Assembly: GCA_951406725.2 (NCBI GenBank)
Contig: OX597825.1
Coordinates: forward strand, 51,770,001-51,834,000
Reading direction: 5' to 3'
Length of the DNA stretch: 64,000 bases
DNA from: Octopus vulgaris
Taxonomy: Eukaryota
Shown here: positions 1-63,660 of the stretch, piece by piece
How the letters are laid out: each line of letters begins with the position of its first letter
Position numbering within the stretch: the stretch's first letter is position 1
The notes under the pieces: model-generated
The model's database searches: none
Told to the model about the DNA's origin: nothing
Seen by the model: the letters and a program-made list of their open reading frames with translations, nothing else
Made by a program: the position numbers and the translations under genes

Positions 1-198
1 CAGCTTCCTTAAATACTGAGAGCAAATTTTTGTTTTGCTCGTGTTTTGTGGCTATTTATATTAGTTTTCCTTGCTTCTGAAATAGGTATTTTTGCAGTCC
101 TATGGTAGTTGATTTATAATAGTTTTCCAGCTGTATAAGGCCTCTACCACCTCCTATACGTTGTATATATAGCCTTTCTATGTCAGATTTTGGGTGGT

Positions 199-232
<34 letters not shown>

Positions 233-255
233 CATTATTATTATTATTATTATTT

Positions 256-342
256 TTCAGGTCACTGCCTGGAATCGAACTCGGAATCAAGGGTTAGTAC
301 CCCGCTCTCTTGACCTGAATGATAATAGTAATAATAATAATG

Positions 343-408
<66 letters not shown>

Positions 409-575
409 CACATATAACATACAGAAAATTGCACTACTAGGCACTGCACACATCCTACGCAGAACACTTTCCATACAATAACCATCAGAGCATCACAACA
501 AATCACAGCACATACCCAAGGCACACAGAGCTGCGCTCGGTAGTGAAGTGAAAGCACGCTATAAAAATAAAACTA

Positions 576-645
<70 letters not shown>

Positions 646-733: not shown

Positions 734-922
734 TAATAATAGCATCGAAAACTAACTTCGGAATGAGAACCCAGGTTCGAAATTTCCCAAGACACCTGAC
801 AAAGTCTGGAGGGTATATCAGCCAAAACGTGTTAACAACAAACAAGATGAGGACAAATATCCGTCAAATGTCAACAATGTAAAAACTGTACATAATTCCT
901 CATCTCTTCAATATAGAACTGT
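256..922 (+). mobile_element. tRNA-head/(AAT)n/hammerhead-arm element, partial copy (centre plus right arm) with a LINE 3' end inserted in its (AAT)n
   Basis: Reverse tRNA-like B-box (ggaatcgaactc, 271-282) bounded by ttcaggtca/tgacctgaa. Arm 741-922 is homologous to 52790-52975 and carries a degenerate hammerhead (gacac CTGACAA agtctg..cagcc AAAA cgt gtt, 791-833). Confidence 0.7.
405..580 (+). mobile_element. 5'-truncated R4/Dong-like LINE 3' end
   Basis: Encodes NIQKIALLGTAHILRRTLSIQ* plus 3' UTR. Near-identical to 12813-12987 and flanked on both sides by (AAT)n. Confidence 0.9.
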
Positions 923-10773: not shown

Positions 10774-13087
<2,314 letters not shown>

Positions 13088-13420
13088 CCTTTCTACTATA
13101 GGCACAATAGCTGAAATTTGGGGAGAGGGCTTGTCGATTACATCGACACTAGTTCTCATATAGTACTTACTTTATCGAACCCGGAAGGATAAAAGGCCAA
13201 TTCGACTTCGGCCGAATCTGAATTTACACCATAAACAGCTGAAAGAAATACAGCTTAGCCATTTGTCTGACGCGCAAACGATTTTGGCAGTCCAACGCCT
13301 TAGGTTTCAAATTTTAGCACAAAGGCAGAGATTTTGCGTGGAGATTGTTATTCGAATATATTGACCCCATTACATGACAAATATTCTATTTATCTACCCT
13401 GAAAGGTTGAAAAGCAACGT
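13088..13420 (-). mobile_element. Two adjacent SINE family 2 remnants
   Basis: Reverse complements of the family 2 body and tail (ttatcgaacccggaaggataaaaggc; ggtttcaaattttagcacaaagg). Confidence 0.6.
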
Positions 13421-13439
13421 TGATATCGAGAGCGTTTGA

Positions 13440-15385
13440 TTTCGGAAAGTCAAATGTCTGGAGAACTACCGTCTTCAAATTCTTACAGAGTAACATGGCC
13501 AAGGGGAATACACGTCTCCTTCTAAACCATAGTAATGGGATGAGACAATCTACCAACATCAACATCAAACGAGGCATTTTTCAAGGTGACTCCCTCTCCC
13601 CATTACTCTTCTGCATGGCACTGATCCCACTCTCAAACGAACTTAGTAATACCAAGTATGTTTTAAAAATGTATAATATTATAATAAATCAGCTGTTTTA
13701 TATGGACGATCTGAAGCTGTTTGCTAGAAATGACGAAGAGCTAGTAGGGCTGTTAACAATTGTTAAAGAGTTAAGCGACATCAGGATGGATTTTAGTCTT
13801 AATAAGTATGTTAGGGCAACTTTTGTGAAAGGAAAGGTCAAGCAAACAACTTCCATTAAATTAGATACTTACACTACCATCAAGGCGTTTGACCCATATG
13901 AAATATATAAATACCTGGCGATAAACGAAAGAGACAATATACAACACGCTACCTTGAAGGAAAAAGTACGAAAGAAGTATTACAGAAGAATACGACTCAT
14001 ACTAAAAACTGAATTTAACTCTGAAAATTGTATCGAAGCCATTAACGCTCTGGTACTTCTAGTAGTCCCATACGGTTTTAACATCATTAACTGGAATCTT
14101 ACTGAACTCCAACGCCTGGACAGGAAGACAAGAAAACTACTAACATGTAAGAAGATGCACCACCTAAAAGCAGACATCAATCGTTTTAACCTACATAGAA
14201 GTATGATGCAGGTAGAACTGCGCTATAAAACCTCCAGAATAGCAATGAACAAGTACTTATCTAGAACAAAAGACTGGATGCTGTGGATTGTGTGCTAACA
14301 CGAAAGCAGCAACAAATTACATTAACCCTGAATTAGATGAAGAACCTGAAACCACTGCCACGAAGAAAGTAAAACGGATCAAGCAGACTACAAAAAAAGA
14401 ACGGGCGGAAACAAATTGAGGAGCGGTGGAGCAAAATAGCCTCGGCATGGACAGAATATATTCCGAGACCGAAATGCTGATATAGACCAAATAAACCCAT
14501 CAGTGGCCGAGAGGTTCAGAAGTGAAAGCAGAGACTGAATATTTCATATTGGCGGTACAAGATCAAAGTTTGCTTACCAAAAACTACCAGGCTAACGTTC
14601 TTCAAAACGGTTCTGACCCTAAATGCAGATTCTGCGATAGATTTGATGAAACAAAAGACCATCGCGTTTCGGGATGTCCTGTGCTGACAACAAGCGAGTA
14701 GAAAAATCGTCACGATAGGGTAGGTCAGTATTTACATTGGAAAATACATAAACACTACAAAATCAGCTTTCCTGCTTACTGGTATGAACATCATCCTGAA
14801 CCAGCCGCTGAATGTAAAAATAGCACTATCCTCTGGGATTTTCCAGTTAACACCGACAGAACGATCCAGGCTAATCGACGAGACATAATTATTAAAGGCA
14901 GAGAAGAAAATACTTGTAGATTAATAGATGTAAGTTTTCCCACTGATAAAAATATACCTGTAAAGGAATTTGACAAACTAAGTAAATACAAGGACCTGGA
15001 AATAGAAATACTAAAGATGTGGCATCTTAAAGCGAGAACTCTTCCTGTTATTTTGGGTGCCCTTGGTATGATAAGAAAGGTATGTGAGAAACATCTAGAT
15101 AATGCCCCAGGAGGACCATGTCTCAGAGAATCCAAAAGATTGTGCTGACGAGTACTGTCCAGATCCTTAGAAAAACACTATCAGTTTAAATGTTTGTGTT
15201 GTATTATATGGAGATATTTCGCTACTGACCTTGCCACTTTCCCTCCCCAAGCTTTCATTGATACTGTAATATAAATTATCCTTCACTCTCCCTAGGACGC
15301 TGAGTGTGTCTCGGCGAGGGATTGTAACAAACATGTAGATTAAAAGAAAGTACTAATAATAAATCTGATGATGATGATGATGATG
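13440..15385 (+). mobile_element. Second R4/Dong-like LINE subfamily, 5'-truncated and decayed
   Basis: RGIFQGDSLSPLLFC, LFYMDDLKLF, LDRKTRKLL, CRFCDRFDETKDH finger and REL region; 3' UTR ends in a (GAT)n tail. Confidence 0.92.
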
Positions 15386-50084: not shown

Positions 50085-51358
50085 CAAGTCAAAAATAGAA
50101 AATGCTAAAATAATTTTATAGTGAACATTTCAGTACCGGTTTCGGTCACTTTGAGACCTTTTCAACTGTAACGATTAAATAATTAAATTTAGAAAAATTA
50201 GAAGAAAAGTTTTTTTAAAAGAATATTTCTATAGTAGTGTTCAGATTTAAGTGGCATTCTGCCTTTCTCTGACTCCCTTGTTTGCACTTGTGTGCTGGAG
50301 GTCGTTGTGAGTTCTTGGTAGGGTAGTAGAGGAAGAAGACTGGTGAGGAAAGGGGGTGGGAGAATCTGGGAGTGCCCTGATGGTCGTATTTTGAATGGTC
50401 AGTGGCGGCTGGCAGTCTCAGTTCAATTCAGGAGAATATTTATATTGACAGGCTTGTTTATAGAATTTGCGTAGGTGTTATACTAAAAGACATTAGTGAC
50501 AAGGTTAAGGGGTAGGAGGTGGAGAAGTAGAAGAAGAAGAAGAAGAAGAAGAAGAAGAAGAAGAAGAAGAAGGAGAAGAAGAAGAAGGAGAAGAAGAAGG
50601 AGAAGAAGAAGAAGAAGAAGAAGAAGAAGATGACGATGTTGATGATGATGATGATGAAGAGGAAGAAGAAGAAGAAGAAGGAGAAGGAGAAGATTACGAT
50701 GATGGTGATGGTGGTGATGATTATGACGACGATGATGATGATAATGATGATGATGATGAAGAAGAAGAGGAAGAAGAAGAAGAAAAAAACAGAGAAGGGA
50801 GAATATGAATGGGTTAAAGTAGTGAGATGTTGTATGACTTGAAGTTGGTATGTTATGGATTATAGCTGTGATTTTAGCTGTGATTAGTAATGGATTCTTT
50901 GGAATGTAATATTTGTGTGTGAATATTTCTTTTATTCTAAAGTTGAGGTATATTAATTGTTTGTCGTAGACCTGTTAAGAAGTGGCCTGTATTTTGCAAT
51001 AAAGAGAGTTTCTTTACTTATTCGTTGTCTCGAGGTTGTATCGTCCCTAAATTGGTAGAGGGGGAAAATCCTGAAGCTTGGTGTTTTTTTGTTGGCGCAA
51101 GTATCTATGTGTTGGCTAAAAGCTATTTTTCTGTTTTGGGGAATTTTTATCTGGGATCTGTGCAGGGCCATTCGTTTACGCAAACTATTTTTTGTTTGGC
51201 CTATGTACTGCTCTTGACACCCGGAGCAGGTTAGTGAGTATATTAGGTTCTCCGAAGCACATGTGAAGTTGCTTTTCACTGTAAACCGTTGTTCCTGTTT
51301 GAAGGAGAACTCTGATCCCTCAATTAGATAGTCGCATATCCCGCAATTGGGTCTTCCA

Positions 51359-51363
<5 letters not shown>
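50085..51363 (-). mobile_element. Penelope-like element 3' part: GIY-YIG endonuclease, 3' region with (GAA/GAT)n, terminal repeat with hammerhead
   Basis: Stop-free CGRPNCGIC..FTCASENLIYSLTCSGCQEQYIGQTKNSLRKRMALH..KETLFIAKYRPLLN (50953-51363); hammerhead at 50131-50170. Confidence 0.92.
50131..50170 (-). ncRNA. Minimal type I hammerhead ribozyme, U3-A8 core variant
   Basis: CAG UUGAAAA GGUC ucaaagu GACC GAAA CCGGU A CUG: stems I and II pair, stem III is the palindrome ACCGGU, predicted cleavage after GUA. Confidence 0.7.
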
Positions 51364-51420
<57 letters not shown>

Positions 51421-51961
51421 CACAGTAGCCACAATAGTCATCACATTGAATGTGAAGTTTCACAGTGATCCTGGAAGAATGCATTAAAGCAACATGTGTA
51501 GAATTTATTCATCGTACTCAAGCACGCTATGGAAATAGACTTCTTGTTCACATGCTTCTGCTTTTTAGCTGCTAGTGCTGTGCGTACAATCGCCAGCTTG
51601 TCTGGCGCATCAGTCTCATCAAATGTTATCTTAAACAGCTTAACGAGGGCTGCGCAGTAGAATGTAAGCTTTCTGTATCATTAACTAATTATCAGGTCTC
51701 TACTGAGTGATTTTCCGTTCAATAGTTTACAACAACTGTCAAGAGAATTTCACAGTTGATGAAAGTAAATTTTGCGAAAGATGTGACAAGAGACTCCGTA
51801 GCTAATCAAACTCCACTGCATCAAAATTGCTTTCTTTTATGTCTCAACCAAATACTTCTAGACCATCTTGAGGAAGGCGTCATGCGCTTCAAGTCACGAC
51901 CTTTCATACCGCGAAATAACGCTTAGGTGATTAAAGCAGAACACGGGGTTGACGGCCTTCC

Positions 51962-52032
<71 letters not shown>

Positions 52033-52384
52033 CGTACGTAAGTAAGTATGCATGTACCTACGTATGTACGTATGTATGCATGCGTTGTCTAGAGAGTGAC
52101 ATTAGCCCCGAGCTAGGCCTTCTCTCGCTTTAAAAATTACCAAGCACAGGTATAGCTTGATTTTTAACATCTCTATTATGTGTTGCATACAATAGCTGGC
52201 CTTAGTCGATACAAGCAAGAAACTGAACACATGCTTCAACGGGCAGACATCGCCGTCACATCTGTTCCAAAGCGTGTAGCTCCCAGCCGAACTGGAAAGC
52301 CTCATTCGTGCTGCTTTAAGAGAAAGACCAAACAATACAGTACTTGAAATCGAACTGCCGCTATCGTGTATATGTGTATATATG

Positions 52385-52522
52385 AACTATTTGTACATTA
52401 CTTACATTTGACGGATATTTGTCCTCGTCTTGTTTGTTGTTTACACAACGTTTCGGCGGATATACCATTCATCCTTCATCAGGTATCTTTGGGAAAGTTC
52501 GAACCTGTGTCCTCATTCCTAA

Positions 52523-52593
<71 letters not shown>

Positions 52594-52618
52594 TATTATT
52601 ATTATTATTATTATTATG

Positions 52619-52663
<45 letters not shown>

Positions 52664-52730
52664 CTTACTACCTGGAATCGAACTCGGAATTTTGGGGTTA
52701 GTAGTCCGCACTATTAACATCTACGTAATA

Positions 52731-52782
<52 letters not shown>

Positions 52783-52975
52783 CAACAACATCAAAAAATA
52801 CCTTAAGAATGAGAACCCAGGTTCGAAATTTCCCCAAGACACCTGATGAAGGCTGGAGGATATATCTGCCGAAATTTTGTATTAACAACAAACGAGATGA
52901 GGACAAATATCCGTCGAGTGTCAATAATGTAAGTAATGTGCAAAGTTCCTCATCTCTTAAATATAGAACTGTATT
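52385..52975. mobile_element. Complete palindromic tRNA-centre/(AAT)n/hammerhead-arm element
   Basis: Left arm 52385-52523 (minus), (ATT)n, reverse tRNA-like centre 52660-52735, (AAT)n, right arm 52790-52975. CTGATGA..GAAA on each arm, facing outward. Confidence 0.85.
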
Positions 52976-62845: not shown

Positions 62846-63224
62846 GTATATATATTATATTAAATTAGAGACAAAACCACTATTAGGCAAATCTGGATTT
62901 ATTCCCTAATATTTATTATTATATGTATATATATATATACGTATATATATATACGTATATATATGTATATATGTATGTGTGTGTGCATATATATCACAGT
63001 GTTCGAAATCACGTGATATGAGTACGTCTGCAAACACTTTTGCAATTTTCACTCGTTATTGGTAAGTTGGGTTTTTATATACTCGTTTCCTTGAATTCAC
63101 CAGTGTGTACAAGCGAGTTATTGTGGTTTTTGAGCCGTTTGGATTCTTATTTGTAGCAATGATTGGACTATTTTGTACCTTGATTATAAATTAATAATTT
63201 AACTTTTTTGCAGTTCTATATTTA

Positions 63225-63367
63225 ATATTTATATTATTTACATTTGACGGATATTTGCCCTCTTGTTTGTTGTTAACACAACGTTTCGGCTGATAAACCA
63301 TCCAGCCTTCAACAGGTGTCTTGGGGAAATTTCGAACCTGGGTTCTTATTCCTAAGGTATTTTTCGG

Positions 63368-63440
<73 letters not shown>

Positions 63441-63582
63441 CTCACGACCTGGAATCGAAATCGGAATCTTGGGATGAGCCTGCGCTCTTAACCATTATGC
63501 CATGTGACCGTGGATATTTGGTGTAGTGGTTAAGAACGCGGGTTACTATCCCCAAGATTCCGAGTTCGATTGCAGGCAGTGA

Positions 63583-63659
<77 letters not shown>

Positions 63660-63660
63660 G
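63225..63660. mobile_element. tRNA-centre/hammerhead-arm element with two divergent tRNA-like heads; right arm absent
   Basis: Left arm with hammerhead at 63274-63322 (minus), (ATT)n, reverse head 63437-63497, forward head 63519-63588 (TGGTGTAGTGG A-box, GAGTTCGATTGC B-box), (AAT)n. Confidence 0.85.

What the first reader, a model, noticed from the sequence alone, without database searches (positions are those of the whole stretch)
63225..63660. Divergent tRNA-derived Pol III heads feeding (AAT)n and hammerhead arms: a bidirectional SINE-ribozyme element
Seen: two tRNA-like heads sit back to back (63437-63497 minus, 63519-63588 plus). Each runs outward into (AAT)n, and the left one continues into an arm reading GACAC CUGUUGA A GGCUG..CAGCC GAAA CGUU GUGUU. 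The consensus of four arm copies (791, 52441, 52838, 63274) is a complete minimal type I hammerhead with an extra A after A9 and a palindromic ACGU stem III. Established: minimal hammerheads with palindromic stem III occur in Penelope-like terminal repeats and cleave as dimers, and Schistosoma Sm-alpha combines a tRNA-like promoter with a hammerhead. Inference: this is a Pol III-driven, PLE-mobilised non-autonomous element arranged as a divergent pair, an architecture I do not recognise as described. No single copy here has a perfect core.
Basis: partly seen in the sequence, partly recalled or inferred. Interest (0 to 1): 0.82.

Follow-up and report, generated by a model that had tools for sequence, protein, structure and literature searches.

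The report
Octopus SINE with Penelope-type hammerhead
This is one decayed copy of a very abundant short repeat (tRNA-like promoter, AAT run, Penelope-type minimal hammerhead module), and its back-to-back pairing is the usual by-product of Penelope-style insertion, not a new bidirectional design.

Summary
Two tRNA-like heads sit 5'-to-5' at 63438-63509 (-) and 63516-63586 (+). Both run outward into (AAT)n. The left one continues into an arm with a mutated hammerhead (CUGUUGA).

Genome-wide the family has more than 10,000 copies. Its consensus is an intact Penelope-type minimal hammerhead: CUGAUGA, an extra A, a G10.1-C11.1 stem II, GAAA, palindromic ACGU and a 5-bp helix I.

The head-to-head pair is not a designed bidirectional element.
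- Each pair is a single insertion flanked by one 8-16 bp target duplication.
- The halves are 5'-truncated at variable inner points.
- A 33-nt "tail" sits at exactly one outer end in 31 of 35 pairs.

These are the published hallmarks of insertion by a Penelope-like element (PLE), whose protein nicks and extends both DNA strands. The real unit is a monomeric SINE: head, (AAT)n, then a PLE-type 3' module.

Not shown:
- The partner PLE was not found.
- Ribozyme activity and Pol III transcription are untested.
- The stems show no covariation, because this is one young family.
- Rfam and ARAGORN recognise neither the hammerhead nor the tRNA.
- About a quarter of heads carry no arm.

The finding is a new member of a known kind and of moderate interest.

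The parts
63211..63371 (-). 3' arm of the left half. It covers ARM consensus positions 1-149 plus a tail remnant (..TTAAATATAGAACTG) with an internal deletion of about 20 nt. The outer end of the insertion is at 63211.
   Evidence: 93% identity to the ARM consensus
63275..63320 (-). Decayed copy of the Penelope-type minimal hammerhead: GACAC CUGUUGA A GGCUG-loop-CAGCC GAAA CGU U/GUGUU. A6 is mutated to U, so this copy is predicted to be inactive.
63372..63437 (-). (AAT)n run between the head and arm of the left half
63438..63509 (-). Full-length tRNA-derived head (consensus positions 1-75) with A-box-like and B-box-like motifs
63510..63515 (.). Junction between the two 5' ends of the twin
63516..63586 (+). 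tRNA-derived head of the right half (consensus positions 5-75)
   Evidence: 92% identity
63587..63659 (+). (AAT)n of the right half. No arm follows, so this half is head + (AAT)n only.
52381..52971 (.). Second twin insertion of the same family. ARM(-) 52381-52531 has no tail, (ATT)n follows, and HEAD(-) is at 52661-52732. The right half is truncated inside (AAT)n. ARM(+) 52787-52971 carries the tail.
743..921 (+). Arm with tail, preceded by (AAT)n at about 576-742
190..410 (.). Head-only twin. (ATT)n is followed by HEAD(-) positions 17-75 at 258-315, then CCTG plus (AAT)-like repeats. There is no arm on either side.

Best explanation
The region is one old insertion of a high-copy non-autonomous retroposon of a 2.8-Gb genome that is probably Octopus vulgaris.

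The unit is a monomer with three parts:
- a 75-nt tRNA-derived head with A and B boxes, inferred to be an internal Pol III promoter;
- an (AAT)n run of 12 to several hundred nt;
- a 185-nt arm holding a Penelope-type minimal hammerhead. The hammerhead has no helix III, an unpaired A after A9, G10.1-C11.1 and palindromic A15.1-C-G-U16.1. Its cleavage site lies 58 and 93 nt upstream of two alternative 3' ends.

New copies are made, by inference, by the RT/GIY-YIG protein of a Penelope-like element. That protein cuts both strands of an AT-rich target and primes reverse transcription on both. The two cDNAs run inward, stop at variable points and are joined, often at short palindromes. The result is a head-to-head pair inside a single 8-16 bp target duplication, with the 33-nt tail (the stretch between the two RT start sites) at one end only.

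In the window copy the left half is full length, but its hammerhead is mutated. The right half is head + (AAT)n without an arm.

Shown here: the anatomy, copy numbers, consensus motif, TSDs, tail asymmetry and truncation spectrum. Inferred: Pol III transcription, the PLE as the mobilising enzyme, and any ribozyme activity.
For: Copy number and consensus:
- The genome search found at least 1,388 candidates, and the 30 loci fetched give one consensus.
- 34-mer counts are 7,941 for head/AAT, 13,851 for the hammerhead half and 10,709 for the tail, with controls of 0.
- A 25-aa word across the ribozyme gave 26,671 first-look candidates, and all 150 scored were identical.

Hammerhead:
- 27 of 50 arms keep the core pattern and 18 of 50 keep every stem pair too.
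- My min-HHR descriptor hits 29 arms in the SINE loci, and nothing in 98 kb of PLE loci or in the 64-kb window.
- The stems are 95% paired, against 18-36% when the 3' partner is slid by 1-2 columns.
- All four sequence hallmarks listed in PMC4209133 are present.

Insertion anatomy:
- Inverted ARM(-)..HEAD(-)HEAD(+)..ARM(+) units are seen in both arm-selected and head-selected loci.
- 31 of 35 units have the tail at exactly one end (binomial p = 3.5e-6).
- An exact flank repeat of at least 8 nt is found in 17 of 35 units, against 31 of 1,190 mismatched flank pairs.
- The 5' ends of the halves fall as follows: 32 full length, 22 inside the head, 19 in (AAT)n and 22 inside the arm.
- The 3' ends are bimodal, at 140-161 or 183-185.
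- All 9 close pairs in the genome listings are '- then +', and no close tail pairs were seen.
- There are 84 exact full-length/full-length junctions against 0 head-to-tail tandems.

Other:
- The sense strand has no TTTT, while the antisense strand of the arm does.

Literature:
- The inverted 5'-truncated copy and the 30-40 bp tail at one end are described in PMC8557442.
- Canonical PLEs with intact 781-aa RT + GIY-YIG frames abound in this genome.
Against: - No autonomous PLE sharing the arm was found. Thirty GIY-YIG loci with 1.5-kb flanks have no arm similarity and no min-HHR, although in PLEs the HHR lies near the ORF start, which is outside those loci.
- The peptide search across the ribozyme found no long open frame.
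- Rfam finds no hammerhead and no tRNA, even at E <= 10 on a consensus-like copy. ARAGORN rejects the head.
- There are no compensatory changes in the stems, and the core is no better conserved than its flanks.
- RNAcofold gives no special gain for the dimer.
- About 8 of 30 heads have (AAT)n but no arm.
- The tandem pLTR arrangement typical of PLEs is absent.
Confidence: 0.75

Rival explanations
1. Two independent elements: a simple SINE made of a tRNA head plus an (AAT)n tail, and a separate PLE-derived arm element that preferentially lands next to or inside (AAT)n microsatellites. On this view heads and arms are neighbours, not one unit.
For: About 8 of 30 head-selected loci, two places in the window (190-410 and 63516-63659) and several half-units have head + (AAT)n with no arm. 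PLEs prefer microsatellite and ATT targets.
Against: The arm's 5' boundary is always the same nucleotide directly after (AAT)n, and no (AAT)n follows the arm's 3' end. The target duplications flank the whole head-plus-arm twin. The 5'-truncation points form one continuous series through arm, (AAT)n and head, with a peak at head position 1. About 22 of 30 heads are followed by an arm.
Confidence: 0.1
2. A LINE-dependent SINE whose inverted pairs arise by a twin-priming-like accident of LINE reverse transcription. On this view the hammerhead-like motif is incidental.
For: LINEs are the most abundant TE order in O. vulgaris. LINE RT remnants lie in the window. No PLE with this arm was found.
Against: Twin priming inverts the 5' part of one copy and leaves a single 3' end, whereas here two 3' ends face outward. 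The one-sided 33-nt tail is described as unique to PLEs. The motif matches the PLE min-HHR in four independent details. There is no poly(A) or simple-repeat 3' tail at the outer ends.
Confidence: 0.08
3. A DNA-level palindromic element (foldback or MITE with long terminal inverted repeats), or a twin that is copied as a whole from a hairpin RNA.
For: Near-perfect inverted symmetry with a TSD. The centre of full-length twins is mostly the same dinucleotide, AC/GT. A recurrent truncated centre is seen in L004, L080, L081 and L083.
Against: Inner junctions differ from copy to copy. Many monomers and heavily truncated partners exist. The tail makes the two ends unequal in 31 of 35 units. TSD length varies from 8 to 16 bp. 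No promoter would give a transcript spanning the twin. Within-twin arm divergence (8.6%) equals between-locus divergence (9.3%), so there is no sign of a shared left/right history.
Confidence: 0.05

Closest known systems
Minimal hammerheads (min-HHR) of metazoan Penelope-like elements (Cervera & de la Pena 2014, PMC4209133; reviewed in PMC6765202)
   Same: Type I with no helix III, an unpaired nucleotide between A9 and 10.1, G10.1-C11.1, palindromic 15.2-16.2 and a helix I of 4-5 bp. Thousands of dispersed copies per genome, some as opposite-strand pairs 100-700 bp apart.
   Different: Here the motif is fused downstream of a tRNA-like head and an (AAT)n run. No RT/GIY-YIG ORF or pLTR tandem is attached to it in the data I could read.
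PLE insertion architecture (Craig et al. 2021, PMC8557442; Frangieh et al. 2024, PMC11167929)
   Same: Strong 5' truncation, an inverted 5'-truncated copy at the 5' end, a 30-40 bp tail at one end only, AT-rich targets, and an HHR cut site some 60-90 nt upstream of the RT start sites.
   Different: No coding capacity and no head-to-tail tandems (0 found). The promoter appears to be a Pol III tRNA-like head instead of a pLTR promoter.
Schistosoma Sm-alpha / Sj-alpha SINE-like elements (Ferbeyre et al. 1998; summarised in PMC6765202)
   Same: A Pol III-type promoter combined with a hammerhead in a short, high-copy, non-coding retroposon.
   Different: Sm-alpha carries a canonical hammerhead and is described as working from tandem multimers. 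This element has a min-HHR, an internal (AAT)n and inverted rather than tandem pairs.
Metazoan non-LTR retrozymes, proposed non-autonomous PLE derivatives (bioRxiv 10.64898/2026.07.22.740005)
   Same: Non-coding, type I hammerhead, presumed dependence on PLE enzymes.
   Different: Retrozymes are tandem repeats thought to give circular RNAs. This family is dispersed, not tandem, and has a tRNA-like head.
Octopus tRNA-derived SINEs OK, OR1, OR2 (Ohshima & Okada 1994, cited in PMC4758252 and PMC3531059)
   Same: tRNA-derived SINEs of Octopus. From memory, the head resembles a tRNA-Arg(ACG), which is a lead and not a test.
   Different: No searchable paper links them to hammerheads or PLEs.

Membership tests
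PLE-type minimal hammerhead (min-HHR) | Catalytic core CUGANGA ... GAAA | tested here: met
   The consensus reads CUGAUGA..GAAA. 27 of 50 arms keep the core pattern. The focal window copy does not (CUGUUGA).
PLE-type minimal hammerhead (min-HHR) | Unpaired nucleotide between A9 and G10.1, and a G10.1-C11.1 pair | tested here: met
   The extra A is 97% conserved. The 10.1-11.1 pair is G-C in 66 of 78 arms and G-U in 8.
PLE-type minimal hammerhead (min-HHR) | No helix III, with palindromic 15.1-16.1 (ACGU) allowing a dimer | tested here: met
   The consensus reads GAAACGU-U/G. These positions are 92% conserved and H17 = U in 75 of 75 arms.
PLE-type minimal hammerhead (min-HHR) | Covariation supporting helices I and II | tested here: inconclusive
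   Only one-sided changes and no compensatory pair were found. This is one young family about 5% from its consensus.
PLE-type minimal hammerhead (min-HHR) | Location in the pLTR or at the ORF start of an RT/GIY-YIG element | tested here: not met
   No arm similarity or min-HHR was found in 30 GIY-YIG loci, and no long frame across the motif. The loci do not reach the ORF start, so the partner may simply have been missed.
PLE-type minimal hammerhead (min-HHR) | Self-cleavage as a dimer, or protein-assisted | not testable with these tools
   RNAcofold shows no special gain for the dimer. PLE min-HHRs are known to be weak in vitro.
Rfam Hammerhead families (e.g. RF00163) | Match to the covariance model | tested here: not met
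   No hit at the gathering score, nor at E <= 10 on the window copy or on the consensus-like L005. This is expected for a motif without helix III.
tRNA-derived SINE | A and B boxes at tRNA spacing in the 5' head | tested here: met
   Direct reading of the consensus gives TGGCGTAGTGG (fits TRGCNNAGTGG) and GAGTTCGATTCC (one mismatch to GGTTCGANNCC), with starts 44 nt apart.
tRNA-derived SINE | Recognisable as a tRNA by ARAGORN or the Rfam tRNA model | tested here: not met
tRNA-derived SINE | Dispersed, 5'-truncated copies with TSDs, and no Pol III terminator inside the sense strand | tested here: met
tRNA-derived SINE | Pol III transcription from the head | not testable with these tools
PLE-mobilised (non-autonomous PLE) element | Inverted 5'-truncated copy joined at the 5' end, with one TSD around both | tested here: met
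   All 9 close pairs in the genome listings are divergent.
PLE-mobilised (non-autonomous PLE) element | [quoted passage not shown] | tested here: met
   A 33-nt tail sits at exactly one end in 31 of 35 units. The 3' ends are bimodal.
PLE-mobilised (non-autonomous PLE) element | Partial head-to-tail tandems (pLTR) | tested here: not met
   0 exact matches for tail + N(0-30) + head.
Non-LTR retrozyme / Sm-alpha type | Tandem multimers that place two hammerheads on one transcript | tested here: not met
   No tandems were found. Paired hammerheads lie on opposite strands.
MITE / foldback DNA transposon | Fixed terminal inverted repeats with a TSD of fixed length and equal ends | tested here: not met
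   The ends are unequal because of the tail, the inner junctions vary and the TSD is 8-16 bp.

The most novel reading that the evidence does not exclude
The inverted twin is not only a by-product but a self-renewing source unit. Pol III would start 2 nt inside the partner head, so the two divergent transcripts begin AC.. and GU... Their cDNA ends could then pair and rebuild the same centre. The two outward RNAs, each with one min-HHR, would dimerise in trans (ACGU/ACGU) for PLE-protein-assisted processing. That would make this the first described Pol III SINE lineage that parasitises Penelope-like elements, and a large contributor to the SINE and (AAT)n content of octopus genomes.
Probability: 0.12. 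Interest if true: 0.75.

Novelty: new member of a known kind. Interest (0 to 1): 0.45.

Why it matters
SINEs are textbook parasites of LINEs. A family of more than 10,000 copies with a tRNA-type head, a Penelope-type hammerhead module and Penelope-type insertion scars would be a clear case of a SINE-like parasite of PLEs.

It would help classify part of the large "unclassified SINE" fraction reported for Octopus vulgaris (SINEs are 11.6% of that genome, PMC13282606). It would explain many (AAT)n arrays and hairpin-forming inverted repeats there.

It also offers thousands of natural insertion products for studying how PLEs prime on both strands and where the "tail" comes from.

It does not reveal a new kind of ribozyme or a new genetic architecture.

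Tried and rejected
- **Rfam and ARAGORN.** Neither found a hammerhead or a tRNA. The weak mir-885 hit (E = 0.064) is just the head-to-head hairpin.
- **Covariation of the stems.** It is uninformative: no double changes, and the core is no better conserved than the flanks.
- **RNAcofold of two ribozyme RNAs.** The dimer gain is no better than for shuffles.
- **A tRNA-half origin for the arm's 5' part (GGTTCGAAATTTCC).** Its alignment to the head scores no better than shuffles, with 78 of 500 shuffles at or above the observed score. Rejected.
- **Partner PLE.**
  - The 30 GIY-YIG loci gave no arm similarity and no min-HHR.
  - A 25-aa peptide across the ribozyme found only short frames.
- **DNA search with the head.** It returned nothing, because very common words are skipped.
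- **Random genome sampling.** I did not try to read more genome sequence. Later genome calls were counts of patterns I already knew. The variable gap displayed at most 8 spacer letters per match.
- **Same-source test.** Within-twin arm distance does not differ from between-locus distance.
- **Literature.** Lunse et al. 2017 is not held. I did not request Ohshima & Okada 1994, which has no PMC id in the reference lists I saw.

Full report
**What is in the window.** Positions 63211-63659 hold a symmetric structure.
- An arm lies on the minus strand at 63211-63371.
- (ATT)n follows at 63372-63437.
- A 72-nt tRNA-like head lies on the minus strand at 63438-63509.
- Six bases separate it from a second head on the plus strand at 63516-63586.
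- (AAT)n follows at 63587-63659.

The other three arms it cited are at 743-921, 52381-52531 and 52787-52971. None of the four is an intact hammerhead. One addition: the right half of this copy has no arm.

**The genome.** The window is G000:C12:51770001-51834000 of a 2,800,462,988-base assembly. Its contig C8 is 118,905,486 bases. That matches the 2.80 Gb size and 118.9 Mb scaffold N50 reported for the Octopus vulgaris assembly xcOctVulg1.1. The organism is thus an inference, not a given.

**Copies elsewhere.** A DNA search with the arm gave at least 1,388 candidates, and the 30 loci fetched were 92-95% identical. Reading them gave two consensus sequences.
- The 75-nt head is GGGCATATGGCGTAGTGGTTAAGAGCGCGGGCTACTAACCCCAAGATTCCGAGTTCGATTCCAGGCAGTGACCTG.
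- The 185-nt arm starts directly after (AAT)n and ends ...TAAATATAGAACTG.

Whole-genome counts of 34-mers with at most 2 mismatches were:

| Pattern | Count | Reversed control |
|---|---|---|
| Head/(AAT) junction | 7,941 | 0 |
| 3' half of the hammerhead | 13,851 | 0 |
| Terminal 34 nt of the arm (tail) | 10,709 | 0 |

A 25-residue word spanning the ribozyme gave 26,671 first-look candidates, and all 150 scored were identical. Arms in my sample are on average 4.9% from the consensus. That sample is biased towards young copies.

**The hammerhead.** The consensus reads GACAC CUGAUGA A GGCUGG-loop-UCAGCC GAAA CGU U/GUGUU.
- It has the full core.
- It has an unpaired A between A9 and G10.1.
- It has a G10.1-C11.1 pair.
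- It has no helix III, but a palindromic A15.1-C-G-U16.1.
- It has U17 and a 5-bp open helix I.

These are the four sequence features that Cervera and de la Pena listed as emerging hallmarks of the min-HHRs of metazoan Penelope-like elements, together with a short helix I.

Of 50 arms, 27 keep the core pattern and 18 also keep every stem pair. A descriptor I wrote for this motif found 29 arms in the SINE loci. It found nothing in 98 kb of unrelated PLE loci or in the 64-kb window, so chance matches are rare.

The limits of this evidence are as follows.
- Rfam's hammerhead models do not match, even at E <= 10. That is expected for a motif lacking helix III.
- The stems are 95% paired but show only one-sided changes.
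- The core is no better conserved than the flanks, 0.95 against 0.95-0.96. The copies are decaying neutrally and covariation cannot be scored.
- Folding predictions give no special support for the dimer.
- Activity is untested.

**The head.** TGGCGTAGTGG fits the A box TRGCNNAGTGG. GAGTTCGATTCC fits the B box with one mismatch. Their starts are 44 nt apart, as in tRNAs (direct reading of the consensus). The sense strand from head to arm end has no TTTT, whereas the antisense strand of the arm has T5. ARAGORN and Rfam do not call the head a tRNA. So it is tRNA-derived, not a tRNA. Pol III transcription is inferred.

**Why the pair is an insertion scar, not a design.**
- **One TSD per pair.** In arm-selected loci and in loci selected only by the head, the commonest layout is ARM(-)-(ATT)n-HEAD(-)|HEAD(+)-(AAT)n-ARM(+). 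The whole pair is flanked by one direct repeat of 8-16 bp, for example AGAGAGGAAGTT, TTGTTACTTATT and AATTACAGTTTGTTCT. An exact shared word of at least 8 nt occurs in 17 of 35 units, against 31 of 1,190 mismatched flank pairs.
- **Variable inner ends.** The 5' ends of the halves are 32 full length, 22 inside the head, 19 inside (AAT)n and 22 inside the arm. Partners can be reduced to the last 46-57 nt, as in L006 and L027.
- **Two classes of outer end.** The arm stops either at positions 140-161 or at 183-185. The extra 33 nt (TACATAATTCCTCATCTCTTAAATATAGAACTG) is present at exactly one end in 31 of 35 units (p = 3.5e-6).
- **Orientation.** All nine close pairs in the genome-wide listings are '- then +', and no paired tails occur.
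- **Junction types.** Exact full-length/full-length junctions occur at 84 loci, while head-to-tail tandems were not found.
- **No shared history of the two arms.** Arms of one pair are as diverged from each other (8.6%) as arms of different loci (9.3%).

**Comparison with the literature.**
- Craig et al. describe PLE insertions as strongly 5'-truncated. They often carry an inverted 5'-truncated copy at the 5' end and a 30-40 bp tail at only one end.
- Frangieh et al. showed that a purified PLE protein cleaves and extends both strands.
  - It prefers ATT-containing AT-rich DNA.
  - It starts reverse transcription at two adjacent internal RNA sites, and the interval between them is the tail. They call this signature unique to PLEs.
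  - The hammerhead cut site lies 85-92 nt upstream of the RT start.
  - Cleavage is protein-assisted and not needed for insertion in vitro.
- In this family the cut site (arm position 92) lies 58 and 93 nt upstream of the two end classes.
- Cervera and de la Pena had already noted min-HHR pairs on opposite strands 100-700 bp apart.
- The genome holds many canonical PLEs with intact 781-aa RT + GIY-YIG frames. A GIY-YIG remnant lies in the window at 50953-51459.

The best explanation is therefore a monomeric Pol III SINE with a PLE-type 3' module, mobilised by a PLE. The divergent pair is the by-product of priming on both strands.

**What remains open.**
- **About 8 of 30 heads carry (AAT)n but no arm**. 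This includes the right half of the focal copy and a head-only twin at 190-410. Possible reasons are internal priming on (AAU)n by ATT-cut DNA, or an older head + (AAT)n SINE to which the PLE module was later fused.
- **The centre of full-length twins is mostly the same dinucleotide,** AC/GT, in 29 of the 50 loci listed. A recurrent truncated centre uses a GGTTAA/TTAACC microhomology. This suggests that the two cDNAs join at short palindromes, but the details are unexplained.

**Novelty.** PLE min-HHRs, their dispersed and inverted copies, PLE insertion scars and a Pol III SINE with a hammerhead (Sm-alpha) are all known. Non-autonomous PLE derivatives have recently been proposed for vertebrate retrozymes. 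I found no searchable paper that links octopus SINEs to hammerheads or PLEs. The recent O. vulgaris repeat annotation leaves nearly all of the recently active SINE families it lists (893 of 900) unclassified. Octopus tRNA-derived SINEs (OK, OR1, OR2) were described in 1994. I could not compare sequences with them.

I file this as a new member of a known kind. It is interesting mainly as a probable SINE-type parasite of PLEs at a scale of more than 10,000 copies.

Noticed in passing
window 190-410: A head-only inverted twin. (ATT)n is followed by HEAD(-) positions 17-75, then the last bases of a plus head and (AAT)-like repeats, with no arm on either side. It shows that head + (AAT)n can be inserted in the same twin fashion without the hammerhead module.
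   Followed up: partly
window 50953-51459 (-): Open frame with a GIY-YIG domain (Pfam PF01541, E = 5e-5), 71% identical at DNA level to part of a canonical PLE ORF (L037). It is a Penelope-like element remnant about 0.9 kb from the twin at 52381-52971.
   Followed up: partly
window 10862-12888 and 13411-15148 (+): Two LINE-type reverse transcriptase remnants (RVT_1, zf-RVT).
   Followed up: no
G000 genome-wide; L037, L042: A very young canonical PLE family. Dozens of copies have an uninterrupted 781-aa RT + GIY-YIG frame, and many are 100% identical over a 110-aa probe (4,562 first-look candidates). It looks recently active. Its 3' region carries repeated TGACGTCA-like motifs and no min-HHR by my descriptor.
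   Followed up: partly
window 63480-63543: A weak Rfam hit to the mir-885 precursor (22 bits, E = 0.064, far below the gathering score). It is simply the hairpin formed by the two facing heads. Thousands of such twins could give hairpin RNAs if read through.
   Followed up: no
G000, 84 loci (e.g. C2:20660004-20660035): At exact full-length head-to-head junctions the spacer is nearly always 2 nt. It is AC/GT in 29 of the 50 loci listed and AT in 9. No GTAC or ACGT spacers were seen.
   Followed up: partly
L004, L080, L081, L083 (centre of the twins): The same truncated centre recurs in independent loci: one half down to head position 17, the other from about position 36-40, joined at a GGTTAA/TTAACC microhomology. 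It appears to be a hot spot for joining the two halves.
   Followed up: partly
window 525-600: The arm at 743-921 is preceded, beyond its (AAT)n, by a different, shorter head-like stretch (..GCTCGGTAGTGAAGTGAAAGCACGC..ACTACTG). It may be a diverged or partly deleted head variant.
   Followed up: no
whole window: Extreme density of microsatellites: (TA)n, (GATA)n, (TG)n, (AAT)n and (TC)n. Several of the (AAT)n arrays (from about 576, at 52532-52660, 52733-52786 and 63372-63659) belong to copies of this SINE.
   Followed up: no
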